DNA of 64,000 nt. Origin: Podarcis vaucheri (lineage: Eukaryota). Every line of letters starts with the position of its first letter. Position 1 is the first letter of the stretch. The stretch lies in the NCBI GenBank assembly GCA_965113315.1, contig OZ220382.1, one strand, 5' to 3'. Positions 2,581 to 39,898 of the stretch are shown in pieces. The notes below the pieces were generated by a model. The model was not told the DNA's origin. It was given only the letters and a program-made list of their open reading frames with translations, and made no database searches. The position numbers were made by a program, and so were the translations under genes.

Positions 2581-4532
2581 GTGTTATTAATTTTATTCTG
2601 GAACATGCTTGTAGGCCAGTAGGTTCAGGAAGGATATTTTGTTTCTCTCTTAAGTTCTTTGATTCCCCATCTTACTCTTAAGAGGTGGTCAGCTATTGTA
2701 TTCTTGGAGCCCAGTGATCTAGTAGCTAATGCTGCAGGAACTGGTTGTGTATTTTGCTGCAGAACCACATCTCTTCCAGAGTGGTCAGGCTCTAAAATAA
2801 AGCCACTTCTCTGTGTGTGGATGTAGGGATCTGCCTTACATTGACTCAGCCTATTTGTTCACCTAAGTGGGTAGATAGATTTTAGCCCAAAATTCTCTAC
2901 TACTATGAATGGTTGTGACTCCACAGGGTTTCAGCGAGAGAGAGGTGTTTTCAATTACCTGCCACCTGGGAAACTCAACTGAAGATGTCAGGATCTGATC
3001 CTGGGACTTCCTGAATGCAAAGCATGAGCTATAGCATTGCCCCAATTTCAACTGTGGTCCATCAAGCTCACCATTGTCCAACAGATGTTGCTGGACTCCA
3101 ACTTCCAGCAGCCTCAGCCAGCATGGCCACTGGTCAGGTATGAAGGGAGTTATAATCCAACCATATCCAGAAGGCAATAAGGTCCTTATGTCTGGTCTGC
3201 ACTGGTGGACAGTGGTTCTGTAGGGCTTTAGAAAGGAGTCTTTTCCAGCCCTACCTGGATATGCCAGAGATTGAACCTCAGATCTTCTGCATGCAAACCA
3301 GATGCTCTACCAAAGAGCTATATCCCCTTTCTAATGGAATTGTGATGAACACATGAAGCTGCCTTATTCTGAGTCAGACTAAGGGCCCATGCAGCTCAGC
3401 AATGTCTATGCTGACTGGCATTGGTTCGCCAGGCTTAGAAACAGCAGTTTTTTCAAGCCGTACTTGGAGCTCCTATGTGCTCTACGACAGAGCTATGCTC
3501 ATTCCTCTGAACATAGAAAGAAGCCTTGTTTTTAGGCAGACCAATGGCCCATCATCAGTATTGTCTACATTGACTGGCACCGCCTCTCTGGGGTTTCAGG
3601 CAGGTCCTACTTGAAGATGCCCAGGAATCTAGAACCCTTTGCATGCAAAGAAGGTGTTCTGCCCTTCCTCATGAAGGAATGCCCACCCAGCCCAGCATTC
3701 TCTACTCTGCTTGGCATTACTTCTCTATGGTCTCAGACACAAAGATCTATATATGCAAGAACAACTGTGGCCTATATATATATATATATGCAGAATGGTA
3801 TTCTTGCACTTCAGTGTGAAGGAACCAATTAATTATGTAGCATGTTGCTTTTGAAAATTGAGCAACTGGAACTGAATGTGTTGGGAAATGGAGTTGCCCT
3901 TTTTGAGTATGAGACCAGTTGGGTCTTGGGGAGGGGTCATGGCATGCAATGCACTCGAGGCGTGCCTCCCATAAATCACAACACTGGAGTGCCGAGTTTT
4001 GCGTTAATCCTTCCTTACATGCAGAAATGCTGTCTCTGCAGCTTGTGATAAGGCAGAGGAAATTAAATTGTTTTCCTGTGTGCATGGCACAGCAAGGTGC
4101 TTACGCAACTTTTTAATAAAACACCAGCGCTGCTATGGCGATGGTGGCGGCTAATTTAATGCCAGTTAGAATTTCTCCCCTTAAACTTGATTGCTTTCCA
4201 AACTATGCAGAGGCCTGAAATGTCCAGCTTTTTGATGCGCTGATACTTGTATGGCCAGTCAATGAAGGAAGATTATGGAGAGGCAAGAAGCTATAACGCT
4301 CGCTCACTATACATGGAATGAGTGCAATTTAGAAAGGGCCACAGCTTGTGTACTTTTAAAATTCCTGGAGGAGGGAGGGGGAAATAACCGGACTGTTGGT
4401 AAAAAACAATCAGGCACAATCAAGCCTCAATTCTGATTCAAATCTTCGTGTCTATTTCAGTGCATTTGTGGAGCTCCTATGTATTCAGTCTTTTCCCATT
4501 CACTTCAATGGCATGTAATTAAAAAATGGTCA

Positions 4533-7591: not shown

Positions 7592-7760
7592 TCAGTAGCT
7601 GAACTGGGTTCCACACAGTCACAAAAGAAATAAACCAAAAAGCTGCAAAAAGAAAAATGCAAAAAAATAACAAAAACAAAAGCACCAAATATAAGTTCCA
7701 AATATTACCTCTGTGTTGCATGTGTGCTCAGGACTCAACAGCCGACAGACCTCAGCGTAG

Positions 7761-7944
7761 CACTCAGAACAGAAGCGTGGCACTCAAATCCAAAGCGGAA
7801 CACTCAAATTCGAAGTGTGGCACTCACAACAGAAGCGTAACACTCAAATCCAAAGCGAAACACTCAAAACAGAAGCGTGGCACTCAGAATGGAAGTGCAA
7901 CACTCAAATCCAAAGTGAAACACTCTAATCTGAAGTGAAACATT
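7761..7944. repeat. 20-bp-period tandem array (9 units) in the Tigger 5' non-coding region
   Basis: CACTC recurs exactly at 7761, 7781, ... 7921; consensus approx CACTCAAAWCNRAAGYGNRR. Confidence 0.9.
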
Positions 7945-8533
7945 ATTTTTTTAAAAAATGATATTTATTGAGAATTTTTTTTTAAAGTTACAAAAGAAAA
8001 ACAAAGTAGAAAAAGAAAAAAAACCAAGCCACTTCCAACCATACATATACAAATTCAAAAAACACAAAAAAAACAAAAATACACCACAAACATTTAAAAA
8101 CATTTAAAAACAAATCCATTATTCTCAACTCCTCAACTATCATTACCCTCTTTCCTTGACCTCCTCCTCCTCCCCTTCCTTGTATCCTGGTTGTTAATTG
8201 TCACAGCAAATCCTTTCCATATTTCATAATATTCTGTCATTACATTACCTTAAACTATTTTAATCTTATCTTACTATAAAAAACCTTGAAACTTAAAACT
8301 TAAATCTTATTTTTACCAACTTCTCATAACCATAATATCCTTGCATAATTCTTTAAACATTTTTACTAAAGCCAAGTAATTTCATCCCAACATTTTTCTA
8401 ACATTCATCAATTTTGTAAAACAGTCCTAGTAGTGCAAAAAGGAAATAAAAACAAATCCAATCTTTATCCGGCGTCCCTTCCTCCTGGTCCCGGGTTTTG
8501 TCAGTCCTCATTATCCCATCAATCTGGCGCATT
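7945..8533 (-). mobile_element. Short 5'-truncated L1-like 3' end nested in Tigger
   Basis: T-run plus TTTATT (polyA signal) at the left end. Right end reads as ...RDQEEGTPDKDW, resembling an L1 ORF2 C-terminus. 9-bp TSD TGAAACATT at 7936-7944 and 8534-8542. Confidence 0.8.

Positions 8534-17855: not shown

Positions 17856-17887
<32 letters not shown>
17856..17887. repeat. (AT)16 at the 3' end of PLE copy A
   Basis: Direct reading. Confidence 0.95.
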
Positions 17888-17889
<2 letters not shown>

Positions 17890-17971
17890 TTTCGTAGATT
17901 TTCACGGGTACAGGAATGCAGGTTTTGGTGTCCTCGGGTGTCTTCCCGTGTAAGAGTCGGGGTGTCTGTGC

Positions 17972-18005
17972 GACGTTTCGACGAGGTCTCACTCGTCATC
18001 TTCAG
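17972..18005 (-). ncRNA. Minimal hammerhead ribozyme motif (PLE pLTR, copy A)
   Basis: CUGAAGA-U-GACGAG-ugagac-CUCGUC-GAAA-CG-UC: core boxes CUGANGA and GAAA, 6-bp stem II, palindromic ACGU stem III, GUC cleavage triplet. Confidence 0.8.
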
Positions 18006-18239
18006 GCTGGTGCTTTCGGCTTCTTGTTACTGGAACAGAGCAGAGTCTGGTGTTTGAGTTCCTATAAATACTGTTGAGGGGTGTGGTGTATAGCCTCCAA
18101 CGTTCTGGGCAGAGAGGAAGTTCCTAGATTAGTGTGCCTTTTCTTCTTTTGTTCCTTAATTACTTGAGGGATATCTTGGGTGATTTCATGAGTGATATTC
18201 TGAATATCACTGGGTGGGTCATTAAGTGTAGATTAGTTG

Positions 18240-20240
18240 CTAAAGCTTTCGTGTCTTGACCTCTTGAGCTTGTGAAGAGTTTTTCTGAGAAGATGGCTGT
18301 GCTGCATTTAGTTGTGCTCTGGCTTGGCTTCGTGTATAGGGGCGAGCTATGGTTTTGTGCCTTGTGCCAGCCAGATCTGTGTAGGGATTGCAGGGGGGTG
18401 CAGCATCCGGAGGTGCCACTATAGTTTGGCTACTGGATGGAGTCTGTAATATGTCTGTGGAGAGGGTCTGGGTTTGGGTCTGGTGTGGTTGATTGGTGAC
18501 GGCGTTCTGTGTGCCTCTGGTTCTGGTGTCGGTTTTTGTGGGGAGGGCTAATTTCCAGATGTCTGGCAGGCGGGACGTGTCGTCACGCTTGTTCATGTTG
18601 TGAGGGTGTTTCTCTATCTCGATGGCTTCCATGATTATTCTCTTGTGGTGATGTTCCATGTTAAAGAGCAATTTGGAATCTGCAAAATTAATTTCGTGTC
18701 CTGTTTCTTTCATGTGTTGGAAAAGAGAGGAAGTTTTTTCTTCTTTTTTGACGGCATTCTTGTGTTCTGCGATACGTGCATTTATTCGTCTGTTTGTTTG
18801 TCCAATGTACGTGGCTGGGCAGACTTTGCAGGGTATTTCATAGACCCCTTGGTTTTCCAGCTGGATTTTGTCTTTTGGGTTTCTGAGGATATTGGTTATT
18901 TTTTGGTTGGTGCAGAAGGCTGTTTTGATATTGTGTTTATGGAGGATTTTGCTGATTTTGTCTGTAGTGCCCTTGATATAAGGAAGGAGGGCCATGCCAT
19001 TGTTTTCTTCTGTGTCTTGGTTTTTGGGGGGTGTTTCTTTTTGGATTAGCTTCGTAACCCTGTTTTTCTGGTATCCATTGGCGATTAACACATTTGAGAG
19101 ATTCTGTAACTCAGTTGTCAAGTGGTCTTTGTCAGCCAGGCGTTTGGTTCTGGAGATGAGAGTCTTGGCTACGGAGTTTATTTGTGCAGGGTGGTGGTGT
19201 GATTGTGCATGTAAGTAGCGGTTGGTGTGTGTTTTTTTCCGGTAGATAGTGTGTCCTAGGGAGCCATCAGGTTTTTTGTAGATTAGGACGTCAAGAAAGG
19301 GGAGTTGGTTGTTGTCTTCTATTTCCATAGTGAATTGTATTTTGGGGTGTAGGCTGTTGAGATGTGTGAGGAAGCTATCTAGTTTTTCTTTCCCGTGTGG
19401 CCAAATTACAAAGGTGTCGTCAACATATCTGAGCCAAAGTTTGGGTTTGTGTTCTGACTTGTCTAAAGCATTGGTTTCAAAGTGTTCCATGTACAAATTT
19501 GCGATGACCGGTGAGAGGGGTGATCCCATAGGTGCTCCTTCTATCTGTTTGTATCTTTGTCCATTGTGGATGAAGTACGTGTTGGTTAGGCAGTGGTTGG
19601 TCAGGTCCAGGATGTATTTGGGGGGGTTGTATTTGTTTTGAATGGCTGTCAAGGCTTCATTAATGGGCACTTGAGTGAAGAGAGATACAACATCGAAGCT
19701 CACAAGTAGGTCATCGGGATGTAGGTATTGTTTCTTTATTGTTTCTATGAACTGGAAGGAGTTAGTAACGTGTGAAGCGATGGATTCTGCATAGGGCTGA
19801 AGTTGCTTAGCGAGAAATTTAGCGAGATTTTGTAGAGGTGAGCCTATGGAGCTGACTATTGGTCTGAGTGGTGTTCCTTCTTTGTGTATCTTGGGGAGAC
19901 CGTAGAGTTTGGGGCATCTGGATGATTTTTCTCTGGGGATGATTCTTAGCTGGATTTCTTCACTGATAGGAGAGGCTTTTATTTTGGATTTGGTGGTTTT
20001 TTCCAGATAGGTGGTGGGATCTGTTTTTATAGGTTGGTAGGTAGGGTCTTGGAGTAGATTTGATAGTTTTGCTTGGTAGTCCGATGTGTTCATCACAACA
20101 GTGGCGTTGCCTTTGTCTGCTGGGAGAATGATTATGTTGTTGTCTTTCCTTAGGTTGGTGAGTGCTTTCTGTTCTTCTTTGTGTAAATTGCTTCTGGGTG
20201 GTTTGCTGGAGCAGAGGATGTTGGTGACTTCAAGTCTGAT
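18240..20240 (-). CDS. PLE reverse transcriptase + GIY-YIG endonuclease ORF (N-terminally truncated, no internal stops)
   Basis: The frame stays open 48 codons upstream of the tracked start (IRLEVTNIL...IIILPADKGNATVVM). Motifs: LYGLPKIHK, LRPIVS, SFDVVSLFT, GAPMGSPLSP, RYVDD, LPFLDV, then GVYEIPCKVCPATYIGQT...RIAEH...EAIEI...N. Confidence 0.95.
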   Translation of the reverse strand: MRLEVTNILCSSKPPRSNLHKEEQKALTNLRKDNNIIILPADKGNATVVMNTSDYQAKLSNLLQDPTYQPIKTDPTTYLEKTTKSKIKASPISEEIQLRIIPREKSSRCPKLYGLPKIHKEGTPLRPIVSSIGSPLQNLAKFLAKQLQPYAESIASHVTNSFQFIETIKKQYLHPDDLLVSFDVVSLFTQVPINEALTAIQNKYNPPKYILDLTNHCLTNTYFIHNGQRYKQIEGAPMGSPLSPVIANLYMEHFETNALDKSEHKPKLWLRYVDDTFVIWPHGKEKLDSFLTHLNSLHPKIQFTMEIEDNNQLPFLDVLIYKKPDGSLGHTIYRKKTHTNRYLHAQSHHHPAQINSVAKTLISRTKRLADKDHLTTELQNLSNVLIANGYQKNRVTKLIQKETPPKNQDTEENNGMALLPYIKGTTDKISKILHKHNIKTAFCTNQKITNILRNPKDKIQLENQGVYEIPCKVCPATYIGQTNRRINARIAEHKNAVKKEEKTSSLFQHMKETGHEINFADSKLLFNMEHHHKRIIMEAIEIEKHPHNMNKRDDTSRLPDIWKLALPTKTDTRTRGTQNAVTNQPHQTQTQTLSTDILQTPSSSQTIVAPPDAAPPCNPYTDLAGTRHKTIARPYTRSQARAQLNAAQPSSQKNSSQAQEVKTRKL

Positions 20241-20292
20241 TCAAACACCAGACTCTGCTCTGTTCCAGTAACAAGAAGCCGAAAGCACCAGC

Positions 20293-20326
20293 CTGAAGAT
20301 GACGAGTGAGACCTCGTCGAAACGTC
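20293..20326 (+). ncRNA. Hammerhead ribozyme motif in the inverted pLTR segment
   Basis: ctgaagatgacgagtgagacctcgtcgaaacgtc, the same motif on the + strand. Confidence 0.78.
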
Positions 20327-20377
20327 GCACAGACACCCCGACTCTTACACGGGAAGACACCCGAGGACACCAAAACC

Positions 20378-20380
<3 letters not shown>

Positions 20381-20408
<28 letters not shown>
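20381..20408. repeat. (AT)14 between the inverted pLTR and PLE copy B
   Basis: Direct reading. Confidence 0.95.
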
Positions 20409-20492
20409 GCTTTCGTAGATTTTCACGGGTACAGGAATGCAGGTTTTGGTGTCTTCGGGTGTCTTCCCGTGTAAGAGTCGGGGTGTCTGGGC

Positions 20493-20526
20493 GACGTTTC
20501 GACGAGGTCTCACTCGTCATCTTCAG
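20493..20526 (-). ncRNA. Hammerhead ribozyme motif (PLE pLTR, copy B)
   Basis: Same 34-nt motif, reverse complement. Confidence 0.78.
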
Positions 20527-20807
20527 GCTGGTGCTTTCGGCTTCTTGTTACTGGAACAGAGCAGAATCTGGTGTTTGAGTTCCTATAAATACTGTTGAGG
20601 GGTGTGGTGTATAGCCTCCAACGTTCTGGGCAGAGAGGAAGTTCCTAGATTAGTGTGCCTCTTCTTCTTTTGTTCCTTAATTACTTGAGGGATATCTTGA
20701 GTGATTTCATGAGTGATATTCTGAATACCACTGGGTGGGTCATTAAGTGTAGATTAGTTGCTAAAGCTTTTGTGTCTTGACCTCTTGAGCTTGTGAAGAG
20801 TTTTTCT

Positions 20808-22985
20808 TTCTTTTTTTTTTTTTTAATATGCTTTTTATTAGATTTTCTTCATCACACACATCCAAGAATAAACACAGCCAATATACATTAAAGAAGACAT
20901 TAAATAAGAAAAAGGAGTCAGGAAAGTAAGAAAAAAAAAAGAAAGAAAAAAGTGTATATACAGACAATTTACTAAAAACGACTTCCTTCCCTCCTGATTT
21001 CGGATTTCTACCTTTAATGATTTCATCATACAACTGGTGTAGGTTTTTAGTTTATAACATTGGAAGATTTAAATCAAACCTACTGTAGTTGGTAAGTTAC
21101 TAAGATTACCTTCTAAATATACCATAAATTTATTCCAATCTTCTTTTAACTTTGTATTTTTTTGATTTCTAATTCTTTGCGTCATTTTTGCCATTTCTAT
21201 AAAGCCATAAAGTTTCAATTGCCAATCTTTCACCGTTGGTAAAGTTGGGTTTTTCCAATTTTGAGCAATTAGCATTCTAGCCGCAGCTGTTGCGTATTGG
21301 AAGAGGGTTTTATCTTTTTCCGGTATTTCTTTCCCCACCATCCCTAGTAAGAAGGCCTCTGGTTTTTTGGGAAATGTGAGTCTAAGGATTTTCTTCAATT
21401 CATCATATATCTGATTCCAGAATTTTTTAACTCCCTCACATGTCCACCACATATGTATGAAGTTTCCTTCATTTGTTTTACATTTCCAGCAGGCCTTGTT
21501 ACCGGTCTTATACATCCTGTTTAGTTTTTCTGGGGTTAAATACCATCTATGTATCATTTTTTCTAGATTTTCTCTAATTGCCGCACTCGCTGTAAATTTT
21601 ATTCCTTCACTCCATAATTTTAACCATTTCTCATTTTCTATATTGTGCCCCAAGTCTCTTGCCCATTTTACCGTAACTTCTTTAATTTCTACATCTTTTG
21701 TGTCATGTTCTAATAAAATATTATACAATTTGGATAATAACTTTGTTTTACTTTCAATTATTTCAATTTGGAATTTTGATTTCTTTTCATTCATTCCTAC
21801 TTTCTTATCTTCCGTCCATCTTGCGTTAATTTGGTGGTAATGTATCCAACCCTTCAATTTTTCTTTCAATTCCTCATACGGTCTTAATTTCCAGCCTTCA
21901 TGGGAACTTGTCAGTAGATCTTCATACGTTAAACTTTGTTCATCCAAATTTGTTTTCTTGAGTGATAAAATATCTGTTGGGGACAGCCACCAGGGTGTTC
22001 TAGGTTCTAGCAGTTTTCTATTTCTTTCCCAGACCTCGTATATCGGACCTCTGATGATATGGTTCGAAAAGCTCTTATGTACTTTCCCTTTGCTTGACCA
22101 TAAGTAAGCGTGCCAGCCAAACCTGTTTTCCACCCCTTCGAGTTCCAATAGATCCTTGTTTTCCAAAGTTATCCAGTCTTTCACCCAGCATAAGCAGGCC
22201 GCTTCGTAATACAGTCTTAGGTTAGGTACCGCCAGTCCGCCTCTCTCTTTTCGATCCGTGAGTAGTTTGTATCTAATCCTTGGCCTCCTTCCCTGCCATA
22301 TAAACCTTGAGAGGACTTTCTGCCAGTCTTTAAATATTTTAGTCCCTCTAATAACCGGAATATTTTGGAAAAGGAACAACATCTTAGGTAAGATATTCAT
22401 TTTTATTGCCTCCATCCTGCCAAGCCACGAGAGGTTTACTCTATTCCATACATCCAAATCTTTTTTGACTTTATTCCAGGTCGTTGTATAATTATCTTCG
22501 ATTAAATTTATGTTTTTAGATGTGAGCCAAATACCTAAATATTTTATTTTCTTGGTTACTTCAATTCCATGTTGTCTCTCTAATTTCCCTTTTGTCTCGT
22601 TTTTCAAATTCTTTGTTAATATCTTGGTCTTTGATCTGTTCAATTTGAATCCTGCTAGTCTGCCGTATTCTTCTAGAATTTCCAACGCCTTCTCAATACT
22701 CCTTTCCGGTTCTTCTAGAGATAACATCAGGTCATCTGCATAGGCTTTTAGTTTAAACTCCCTTGATCCTATTTTGATTCCTCGGATATCAGATGTTGAT
22801 CTTATTATATTTGCCAGGACTTCTAATACTATAATGAATAAAAGCGGGGAGAGGGGACAGCCCTGCCTGGTTCCTTTTTCAATTTGGAATGTATCTGTAA
22901 GAGTGTTATTTATTACCAGTTTGGCCGTTTGTTTTGAATATATTGCCTGTATTCCTTTCAAAAATTGTCCCTCTATTCCCGCTTC
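20808..22985 (-). mobile_element. 5'-truncated L1-clade LINE (~2.2 kb) with intact partial ORF2, 3' UTR and poly(A)
   Basis: GTRQGCPLSPLLF, YADD, IKYLGI and C-terminal CCHC (CWKC...HMWWTC), stop at 21069. AATAAA at 20834-20839, poly(A) 20808-20824, perfect 15-bp TSD GTGAAGAGTTTTTCT at 20793-20807 and 22986-23000. Confidence 0.96.
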
Positions 22986-23369
22986 GTGAAGAGTTTTTCT
23001 GAGAAGATGGCTGTGCTGCATTTAGTTGTGCTCTGGCTTGGCTTCGTGTATAGGGGCGAGCTGTGGTTTTGTGCCTTGTGCCAGCCAGATCTGTGTAGGG
23101 ATTGCAGGGGGGTGCAGCATCCGGAGGTGCCACTATAGTTTGGCTACTGGATGGAGTCTGTAATATGTCTGTGGAGAGGGTCTGGGTTTGGGTCTGGTGT
23201 GGTTGATTGGTGACGGCGTTCTGTGTGCCTCTGGTCCAGTGCCTCCATCCAGTAGCCATATATCTCCTAAGCCAACTTGCCTGGGAGTAAGCACCACTGA
23301 ATTCAATAGGACTTTATTCTGAGTAAACATAGCTAGGATTACACTGTAAGCCTAACTCCAACCTGTTGT

Positions 23370-36740: not shown

Positions 36741-37006
36741 CTTGATACAAAAAACAACAATAATCCCAAAACACAATTTATCAAGCCTGTTCTTAAAGGA
36801 AATCTTCTGTATGTCTTCCTTGCTCATTCACTCTGCCTATTCTTTCTGAATTAATTTTTAAAGTGCATGAATGAGTAGTCTGTTTTAGGGTTTTGTTTGT
36901 TGCTTCCTAGCCTCCACCACCACCCCACGCCCCACACAACACTTATGGCTCAAATCAGGGGACTAAGCAGCCTTGAGAAAGTCCACAGAAAACCTTGTCT
37001 CCCCAT
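36741..37006 (+). repeat. ~270-bp direct duplicate of 39381-39656
   Basis: Identical apart from 3 substitutions and a 10-bp indel; ends exactly at the N gap. Confidence 0.95.
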
Positions 37007-37147
37007 NNNNNNNNNNNNNNNNNNNNNNNNNNNNNNNNNNNNNNNNNNNNNNNNNNNNNNNNNNNNNNNNNNNNNNNNNNNNNNNNNNNNNNNNNNNNNN
37101 NNNNNNNNNNNNNNNNNNNNNNNNNNNNNNNNNNNNNNNNNNNNNNN
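37007..37147. other. Assembly gap (141 N)
   Basis: Run of n. Confidence 1.
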
Positions 37148-39376: not shown

Positions 39377-39898
39377 GCGACTTGATACAAAAAACAACAA
39401 TAATCCCAAAACGCAATTTATCAAGCCTGTTCTTAAAGGAAATCTTCTGTATGTCTTCCCTGCTCATTCACTCTGCCTATTCTTTCTGGATTAATTTTTA
39501 AAGTGCATGAATGAGTAGTCTGTTTTAGGGTTTTGTTTGTTGCTTCCTAGCCTCCACCACCACCCCACGCCCCACACAACACTTATGGCTCAAATCAGGG
39601 GACTAAGGAAGAGCGGGCAGCCTTGAGAAAGTCCACAGAAAACCTTGTCTCCCCATCATCATTCTCTGGACATATCTAAAAGGCTTTGGGGGAATCTAGA
39701 GCCAGGAAAAGGACACTTATTGATACCAAGACCTTGGAGGCTGCGGGAGATTATATTTCCATGAGGCATCCCAAAGCGATTTACAATCTTTGACCTAAGC
39801 ATTGCAACAAAAGAAGCAGAAACTGCTTTTTCTCTGGCAAGCATCTGAACTGGTCCATCAGTAGCCTCCATGTCTGCATCCGGGCGGGACATGATGTA

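What the first reader, a model, noticed from the sequence alone, without database searches (positions are those of the whole stretch)
17972..20526. Three hammerhead ribozyme motifs around a lizard Penelope-like RT; two same-strand copies bracket a ~2.5-kb RT-encoding RNA unit
Seen: the motif CUGAAGA-U-GACGAG(ugagac)CUCGUC-GAAACGUC occurs at 17972-18005 (-), 20493-20526 (-) and 20293-20326 (+), identical in all three while nearby bases differ. Known: PLE pseudo-LTRs carry minimal type-I hammerheads with a palindromic stem III (here ACGU), thought to cleave as dimers. Inference: a minus-strand transcript from pLTR B would carry two hammerheads with GUC sites 2521 nt apart. It could excise, and possibly circularise, an RNA containing the whole RT-endonuclease frame, in retrozyme fashion. 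Caveat: I can only form ~2 bp of stem I (GC/GC), so activity is uncertain.
Basis: partly seen in the sequence, partly recalled or inferred. Interest (0 to 1): 0.8.

Follow-up and report, generated by a model that had tools for sequence, protein, structure and literature searches.

The report
Penelope-like retroelement with known minimal hammerheads
The three ribozyme-like motifs are real, but they are the already-described minimal hammerheads carried at the ends of Penelope-like jumping genes. Here they sit in a broken, composite insertion that is unlikely to release a self-cutting or circular RNA.

Summary
Three exact copies of the 34-nt motif lie at 17972-18005 (-), 20493-20526 (-) and 20293-20326 (+).

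The motif is the minimal type-I hammerhead of Penelope-like elements (PLEs):
- CUGAAGA core, bulged U, 6-bp helix II, GAAA, palindromic ACGU, GUC.
- The element's AUG sits inside the core, as published for the green-anole element PAc.

The locus is not a natural tandem unit. It holds:
- an older 5'-truncated copy, later split by an L1-like LINE;
- a second, independent insertion into the same (AT)n tract. This is a 142-nt inverted fragment joined to a 5'-truncated copy that lacks about 238 N-terminal residues and its start codon.

The 2521-nt spacing between the two same-strand motifs is therefore incidental. In a continuous transcript the upstream hammerhead is predicted to be locked in a 142-bp hairpin with its own antisense.

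Two RNA-seq runs of a related organism cover the motif at about 80 reads each, counting all family copies. They show no pile-up of RNA ends and no joints.

Identity of the three motifs is expected by chance at 1.3% copy divergence (P about 0.65).

The cleave-and-circularise idea was proposed in 2014 and remains untested. This scan has noted the same module on other DNA of this genome (91 notes).

Verdict: ordinary, a new member of a known kind.

The parts
17856..17887 (.). (AT)16 microsatellite abutting the 3' end (tail) of the downstream PLE copy
   Evidence: Read directly. Family-wide (AT)n junctions are seen as loose ends in DNA and RNA runs.
17888..17999 (-). First 112 nt of the PLE ORF (AUG at 17999-17997), retained as the 3' 'tail' of the downstream copy. 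It ends at +112, which lies in the published RT start window.
   Evidence: PMC11167929 reports RT starts 111-118 nt into the ORF and a tail spanning about +85 to +119.
17972..18005 (-). Minimal hammerhead no. 1: CUGAAGA-U-GACGAG(UGAGAC)CUCGUC-GAAA-CGUC. The predicted cut is after C at 17972.
18006..18239 (-). Untranslated pLTR segment between the ORF stop codon and the hammerhead
18240..20240 (-). 5'-truncated PLE ORF: 666 open codons plus stop. RVT_1 scores E 1.4e-15; GIY-YIG is weak at E 7e-4. It aligns to residues 239-798 of an 836-aa Anolis PLE protein at 47% identity, and is 96% identical to a Podarcis muralis protein.
20241..20382 (+). Inverted 142-nt fragment (positions -58 to +84 of the module), 100% reverse-complementary to 17916-18057. 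It was made in the same insertion event as the downstream copy. Hammerhead no. 2 lies at 20293-20326 (+).
20383..20408 (.). (AT)n tract where the tails of the inverted fragment and of the upstream copy meet
20409..20803 (-). 3' part of the upstream, older, 5'-truncated PLE copy (pLTR, hammerhead, +112 tail). Hammerhead no. 3 lies at 20493-20526 (-).
20804..22985 (-). 5'-truncated, poly(A)-tailed L1-like LINE inserted into the upstream PLE copy. The 14-bp target-site duplication gtgaagagtttttc is at 20790-20803 and 22986-22999.
22986..23235 (-). 5' part of the upstream PLE copy (C-terminal tail of the ORF), 100% identical to 18272-18521. The truncation point is at 23235.

Best explanation
This is a composite of dead, 5'-truncated insertions of an abundant Penelope/Poseidon-type PLE of a lacertid-like lizard. 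Each copy carries at its 3' end the family's standard module: pLTR, minimal hammerhead containing the ORF's AUG, and the first 84 or 112 nt of the ORF.

Inferred mechanism, by analogy with the anole element PAc: the RT-EN protein binds the start of the ORF on a multimeric transcript. It nicks AT-rich DNA, here an (AT)n microsatellite, on both strands. It then starts reverse transcription internally at about +84 or +112. Priming on both strands gives the inverted 142-nt fragment joined to a 5'-truncated copy.

An earlier copy from a different subfamily already sat at the same microsatellite and was later split by a LINE. The hammerheads are passengers of that 3' module. Every copy retains the motif uncut, so its template was either uncleaved or religated when it was copied. 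Any cleavage is probably weak, dimer-dependent and protein-assisted.

At this locus the motifs are most likely inert.
For: - Three exact motifs against 0 expected.
- RVT_1 plus GIY-YIG frame, 47% identical to an Anolis PLE protein from its residue 239 on, and 96% identical to a Podarcis muralis protein.
- The AUG lies inside the core and the cut site follows about 26 nt later, with tails ending at +84 and +112, as published for PAc (PMC11167929 text and supplements).
- The inverted fragment is 100% identical to the downstream copy but 98% to the upstream copy.
- Two of the upstream copy's differences (17969, 18045) are common family variants, at 29% and 50% of depth in run X1. This points to a different source copy.
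- The family is hugely multicopy with a 3'-to-5' depth gradient, and (AT)n adjoins position 17916 across DNA and RNA runs.
- In 80 PLE loci from metagenomes there are 25 min-hammerheads against 0.2 in shuffles, 20 of them on the ORF strand. Helix II is 97% paired. Helix I, which the scan did not require, is 57% paired overall and 10-11 of 14 at each of its three innermost pairs, with changes on both sides at every pair.
- The PLE architecture of partial tandems, an inverted truncated copy and a 30-40 bp tail is described in PMC8557442.
Against: - No Rfam hammerhead model matches, even at E up to 10. Those models expect a helix III that minimal hammerheads lack.
- Helix I is only 2 bp, whereas 4-5 bp is the published norm for metazoan PLE min-hammerheads; the loci scanned here mostly show 3-5 bp.
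- Nothing here measures catalysis.
- The RNA reads are from a related organism and pool all family copies, so locus-specific transcription is unknown.
- The order of events (two insertions) is inferred from identity patterns, not dated.
Confidence: 0.88

Rival explanations
1. One reading: a minus-strand transcript starting in the upstream pLTR is cut at both same-strand hammerheads. This releases a 2521-nt RNA carrying the RT-EN frame, which may circularise like a retrozyme.
For: - Two same-strand motifs have intact cores 2521 nt apart.
- The palindromic ACGU allows a double hammerhead in principle.
- The general model was proposed for PLEs (PMC4209133).
- PAc RNA is cleaved in vitro when its protein is added (PMC11167929).
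Against: - The upstream motif is predicted to pair over all 34 nt with its antisense copy, in a hairpin of about 142 bp.
- The double-hammerhead fold (-19 to -20 kcal/mol) is less stable than two monomer folds (-23.2) or the dimer MFE (-29.4).
- The interval is a patchwork of two insertions, and its frame lacks 238 N-terminal residues and an AUG.
- No RNA ends pile up anywhere on the stretch and no RNA read supports any joint.
- PAc RNA-seq likewise shows no ends at the site, and ribozyme mutants still insert (PMC11167929).
Confidence: 0.03
2. If the locus is transcribed, its main RNA product is the long hairpin formed by the 142-nt inverted repeat. That hairpin would feed small-RNA silencing of the family, and the hammerhead sequence inside it would be incidental.
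For: - The arms are 98% complementary over 142 nt with a 54-nt loop, and the predicted fold of the 441-nt transcript containing the repeat has an energy of -315 kcal/mol.
- Rfam long-hairpin microRNA models give sub-threshold hits on it, for example MIR7723 at 98.9 bits against a gathering score of 200.
- Family RNA reads occur in both orientations.
Against: - No small-RNA data were examined.
- The microRNA hits are far below gathering scores and only reflect a long stem.
- Such fold-backs are a routine by-product of PLE insertion (PMC8557442).
Confidence: 0.07
3. The motif is a chance resemblance to a hammerhead core inside a repeat and has no ribozyme ancestry.
For: - No Rfam hammerhead hit.
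- Only 2 bp of helix I.
- The three copies are not independent samples.
Against: - The same architecture recurs in distant PLE relatives: 25 against 0.2 expected.
- Helix II, and helix I which was not selected for, covary across them.
- The bulged base and a palindromic helix III are also shared.
- The position relative to the AUG is identical to that in PAc.
Confidence: 0.02

Closest known systems
PAc / Poseidon_Ac of Anolis carolinensis (PMC11167929)
   Same: - RT plus C-terminal GIY-YIG frame, 47% identical over 565 residues.
- Minimal hammerhead with A9-U-G10.1 forming the ORF's AUG, a 6-bp helix II, GAAACGUC, and the cut about 26 nt after the AUG.
- 3' tails ending near +85 and +112 to +119.
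- Insertion into AT-rich DNA, and priming on both strands.
   Different: - Different family: the helix II and loop sequences differ completely (GACGAG/CUCGUC against GCCUGC/GUGGGC, read).
- Helix I here is 2 bp.
- This copy is 5'-truncated and composite rather than a full tandem unit.
Metazoan PLE min-hammerheads (Cervera and de la Pena 2014, PMC4209133)
   Same: - Type-I core with no real helix III.
- Palindromic 15.2-16.2.
[quoted passage not shown]
- G10.1-C11.1 pair and a long helix II.
- Location in pLTRs, with motifs also found close together on opposite strands.
   Different: Helix I is shorter than the usual 4-5 bp. It matches the 2-bp Drosophila virilis variant in that respect.
Non-LTR retrozymes (small tandem hammerhead repeats that give circular RNAs in animals)
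   Same: A type-I hammerhead related to PLE pLTRs; same-strand motifs could in principle delimit an RNA.
   Different: - Retrozymes are short, non-coding, true tandem repeats with documented circular RNAs.
- Here the interval is 2.5 kb, coding-derived and a patchwork of separate insertions.
- No circular-RNA signal was seen.

Membership tests
Penelope-like element (Penelope/Poseidon clade) | Reverse transcriptase with the PLE N-terminal DKG motif and core RT motifs | tested here: met
   RVT_1 scores E 1.4e-15. ADKGNATV and YVDD are read. The frame is 47% identical over 565 aa to an Anolis PLE protein.
Penelope-like element (Penelope/Poseidon clade) | C-terminal GIY-YIG endonuclease with cysteines inside the core | tested here: met
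   GVYEIPCKVCPATYIGQT...R...EH aligns with the PAc-type endonuclease. Pfam GIY-YIG scores only E 7e-4, 20.3 bits, below the 22.6 cutoff.
Penelope-like element (Penelope/Poseidon clade) | Insertion architecture: 5' truncation, an upstream partial copy, an adjacent inverted truncated copy, and a 30-40 bp optional tail | tested here: met
   Tails end at +84 and +112, a 28-nt difference. The architecture is described in PMC8557442.
Penelope-like element (Penelope/Poseidon clade) | No CX2-5CxxC zinc-finger-like linker between RT and EN (that linker marks the Neptune and Nematis clades) | tested here: met
   No such motif is in the linker read. Clade placement rests on this and on the best alignment; no tree was built.
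Autonomous (full-length) PLE copy | Complete ORF with the N-terminal domain, starting at the AUG inside the hammerhead | tested here: not met
   The frame starts at the equivalent of residue 239 of the 836-aa relative. The AUG-led frame from 20520 stops after 96 codons.
PLE minimal type-I hammerhead | Catalytic boxes CUGANGA and GAAA, with a UH cleavage site | tested here: met
   CUGAAGA ... GAAA ... GUC in all three copies.
PLE minimal type-I hammerhead | Helix II closed by G10.1-C11.1, with one extra nucleotide after A9 | tested here: met
   Helix II is 6 bp (GACGAG/CUCGUC) with a bulged U. It forms in the monomer MFE fold.
PLE minimal type-I hammerhead | Palindromic 15.1-16.1 segment that allows a dimeric helix III | tested here: met
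   ACGU here. ACGU, ACGCGU or ACAUGU in relatives.
PLE minimal type-I hammerhead | Helix I of about 4-5 bp | tested here: not met
   Only G-C and C-G form. Relatives range from 0 to 6 bp. A 2-bp helix I is reported for D. virilis (PMC4209133).
PLE minimal type-I hammerhead | Self-cleavage at the predicted site | tested here: inconclusive
   No pile-up of RNA ends in two RNA-seq runs at about 80 reads depth each.
Rfam hammerhead families | Match to a curated hammerhead covariance model | tested here: not met
   No hit at gathering score or at E up to 10. This is expected for a motif without helix III.
Retrozyme | True tandem repeat unit delimited by hammerheads | tested here: not met
   The interval combines the tail of one insertion, (AT)n, an inverted fragment and a truncated copy of another insertion.
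Retrozyme | Circular RNA product | tested here: inconclusive
   No RNA read supports any listed joint. Circles of a genomic tandem would not give a novel junction, so this is weak evidence.

The most novel reading that the evidence does not exclude
Full-length tandem copies of this lizard PLE family may use their protein-assisted dimeric hammerheads in vivo to cut multimeric transcripts. The AUG lies inside the core and the cut falls 26 nt downstream, so cleavage would switch an RNA from messenger to a circularisable template. That would make it an autonomous, RT-encoding counterpart of retrozymes. This truncated locus would be only a fossil of that cycle.
Probability: 0.06. Interest if true: 0.65.

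Novelty: new member of a known kind. Interest (0 to 1): 0.15.

Why it matters
It matters little beyond annotation. It shows that the abundant hammerhead-like motifs in this lizard genome belong to a Poseidon-type PLE family with the published start-codon-in-ribozyme layout. It also shows that pairs of motifs at a locus can arise from repeated insertion into one (AT)n tract rather than from functional tandem units. The open question of what PLE hammerheads do in vivo is not advanced by this locus.

Tried and rejected
- **Rfam.** Scans at gathering score and at E up to 10 gave no hammerhead. They returned only sub-threshold long-hairpin microRNA models caused by the inverted repeat, which I rejected as microRNA genes.
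- **Conservation as evidence of selection.** I rejected the identity of the three motifs as evidence, because copy divergence is 1.3% and one copy is a same-event duplicate.
- **Splicing at the hammerhead edge.** I considered whether RNA loose ends at 18006 and 18008 mark an acceptor at the 5' edge of the hammerhead. One is a diverged subfamily with a 15-nt deletion. The other is unresolved.
- **DNA-contig joints.** Joints such as those ending at 18046 with 'AA' between have short sides of 20-29 letters, so I did not interpret them.
- **More family copies.** A scan of the window for other PLE copies or other hammerhead families found none.
- **Not used.** The big protein search and structure prediction, because the family assignment was already clear.

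Full report
**Observation**

The 34-nt string CTGAAGATGACGAGTGAGACCTCGTCGAAACGTC occurs exactly three times in the window, at 17972-18005 (-), 20293-20326 (+) and 20493-20526 (-). None is expected by chance. The two minus-strand cut sites are 2521 nt apart.

**What the motif is**

Read as RNA it is CUGAAGA, a single U, GACGAG, loop UGAGAC, CUCGUC, then GAAA, CGU and C. These features define the minimal type-I hammerhead of metazoan Penelope-like elements (PMC4209133):
- the catalytic boxes;
- a long helix II closed by G10.1-C11.1;
- no real helix III, but a palindrome (ACGU) that could pair with a second copy.

The monomer fold forms helix II. Only two pairs of helix I can form, as in the Drosophila virilis variant described in that paper. 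Rfam's hammerhead models do not match even at E up to 10. This is expected for a motif without helix III and does not refute it.

**Support from distant relatives**

I fetched 80 loci that encode relatives of the frame from metagenome contigs and scanned them with a simple descriptor.
- There are 25 motifs against 0.2 in shuffles, 20 of them on the ORF strand.
- All 25 have the one-base bulge. Helix III is a palindrome (ACGU, ACGCGU or ACAUGU) in 21 of them.
- On an alignment of 14 distinct motifs, helix II is 97% paired, with changes on both sides in five of six pairs.
- Helix I was not part of the descriptor. It is 57% paired overall and is paired in 10-11 of 14 sequences at each of its three innermost pairs. 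Several pair types occur, and the signal is far above the slid controls.

The kind of motif is therefore under structural constraint. The window's copy sits at the weak end for helix I.

**The element**

The minus-strand frame 18243-20240 is open for 666 codons.
- It scores RVT_1 at E 1.4e-15 and gives a weak GIY-YIG match.
- It is 96% identical to a Podarcis muralis protein and 82% to a Vipera protein.
- It is 47% identical over 565 residues to an 836-aa Anolis carolinensis protein, starting at that protein's residue 239.

That Anolis protein has nearly the same sequence as the product of Poseidon_Ac (PAc), whose consensus I read in the paper's supplement.

In PAc the ORF's AUG is formed by A9, the bulged U and G10.1 of the hammerhead, and the cut site lies 26 nt downstream. 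Reverse transcription starts internally 111-118 nt into the ORF, and an optional tail spans about +85 to +119. The window's module has the same layout:
- the AUG is at 17999-17997, inside the core;
- both direct copies end at +112, directly against (AT)n;
- the inverted copy ends at +84, also against (AT)n.

Public DNA and RNA runs show (AT)n next to position 17916 (+84) as a leading loose end. They also show very high depth with a 3'-to-5' gradient, so this is an abundant, mostly 5'-truncated family.

**Anatomy of the locus**

Reading the minus strand from high to low coordinates:
1. An upstream copy is 5'-truncated at 23235. It runs to 20409 and is split by a poly(A)-tailed, L1-like LINE (20804-22985) with a 14-bp target-site duplication.
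2. (AT)n lies at 20383-20408.
3. A 142-nt fragment of the module lies in inverted orientation at 20241-20382.
4. Joined directly to that fragment is a copy truncated inside the ORF (20240-17888).
5. (AT)n lies at 17856-17887.

The inverted fragment is 100% complementary to the downstream copy and 98% to the upstream one. The upstream copy differs from the downstream one at 8 of about 633 positions. At least two of those differences (17969, 18045) are common variants in the family, at 29% and 50% of depth in run X1.

The simplest reading is two events. An older insertion came from one subfamily. A later insertion into the same microsatellite was primed on both strands, which PAc protein does in vitro, and gave the inverted fragment plus a truncated copy. 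This composite pattern is the published PLE pattern (PMC8557442).

- The 2521-nt interval is not a repeat unit. It is a tail, a microsatellite, an antisense fragment, a truncated frame and a pLTR.
- It does not hold the whole frame. About 238 N-terminal residues and the start codon are missing, and the AUG-led frame from the upstream hammerhead stops after 96 codons.
- In a continuous transcript, all 34 nt of the upstream hammerhead are predicted to pair with the antisense copy, in a hairpin of about 142 bp; the MFE of the 441-nt segment folded is -315 kcal/mol.
- The double-hammerhead fold of two naked copies (-19 to -20 kcal/mol) is less stable than two monomer folds (-23.2) or the dimer minimum (-29.4).
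- Two bulk RNA-seq runs from a related organism cover the motif at about 80 reads each, summed over all family copies. They show no place where molecules begin or end in excess, and no RNA read at any listed joint. Limits: the reads pool all family copies, about 12% of each run was read, and a circle made from a genomic tandem would show no new junction.
- For PAc the authors report no cleavage without protein, core-dependent cleavage with protein, no RNA-seq ends at the site, and normal insertion by ribozyme mutants.
- The identity of the three motifs is not evidence of selection. At 1.3% divergence a 34-nt stretch stays identical with P about 0.65, and one copy is a same-event duplicate.

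**A logical point (inference)**

Every inserted copy retains the hammerhead and the sequence beyond its cut site up to the RT start. So each template was either uncut at that site or religated when it was copied. The data here cannot tell these two apart.

**Comparison and novelty**

The motif class, its place in pLTRs, its occurrence on opposite strands, the dimer idea, the low activity and the cleave-and-circularise proposal are all published (2014). The start-codon-in-core layout and the tail biology are published for the anole (2024). A link between PLE pLTRs and animal retrozymes is argued in a 2026 preprint.

What is new is only the family. It is a lacertid-type element about 47% identical in protein to PAc, with a wholly different helix II sequence. 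I found no paper that describes it. Earlier notes of this scan reached the same reading on other DNA of the same genome.

**Limits**

- Organism names of the runs are coded. The lizard assignment rests on the names attached to the protein hits.

Noticed in passing
window 20804-22985 (-), target-site duplications at 20790-20803 and 22986-22999: A 5'-truncated, poly(A)-tailed LINE (650-aa open RT frame, L1-like C-terminal cysteine motif) is inserted into the upstream PLE copy, with a 14-bp target-site duplication gtgaagagtttttc.
   Followed up: partly
window 20241-20382 / 20437-20578: A 142-nt inverted repeat, 98% complementary with a 54-nt loop, gives sub-threshold Rfam hits to long-hairpin plant microRNA models (MIR7723 98.9 bits against gathering 200). 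It is a fold-back by-product of PLE insertion and a possible small-RNA source if transcribed.
   Followed up: partly
window 18006-18008 (RNA runs X23, X24): RNA reads carry other sequence joined right at the 5' edge of the hammerhead module (7-14 reads each, agreement 0.9-1). One set is a diverged subfamily with a 15-nt deletion. The other has no likeness to the element. It could be a truncated copy in an expressed gene or an exon joined at the CAG just before CUGA.
   Followed up: no
window 17916 and 17888; 20382 and 20409: Element ends fall at +84 and +112 of the ORF and always abut (AT)n. Public DNA and RNA runs show (AT)n next to 17916 across the family. This fits AT-rich targeting and two internal RT start sites.
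   Followed up: partly
L050:195, 2986, 5777 (+): A metagenome contig holds three identical minimal hammerheads exactly 2791 nt apart. It is a true tandem array of a distant PLE relative.
   Followed up: no
80 PLE loci L001-L080: The bulged base between A9 and G10.1 is U in 14 of 25 motifs, which creates an AUG. So the start-codon-in-ribozyme layout may be common but not universal among PLEs.
   Followed up: partly
window 3256-3327 (-): This is the only Rfam hit above gathering score in the window: a tRNA-like sequence (34.1 bits) with several mispairs, perhaps a tRNA-derived SINE head or a pseudogene.
   Followed up: no
window 36741-36967 and 39381-39607: Two 227-nt direct repeats, 99% identical, lie 2640 nt apart on either side of the N run 37007-37147. 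The gap was left alone.
   Followed up: no
window 7754-7962: A tandem array of a 20-nt unit (about 10 copies, 64-83% alike) of unknown nature.
   Followed up: no
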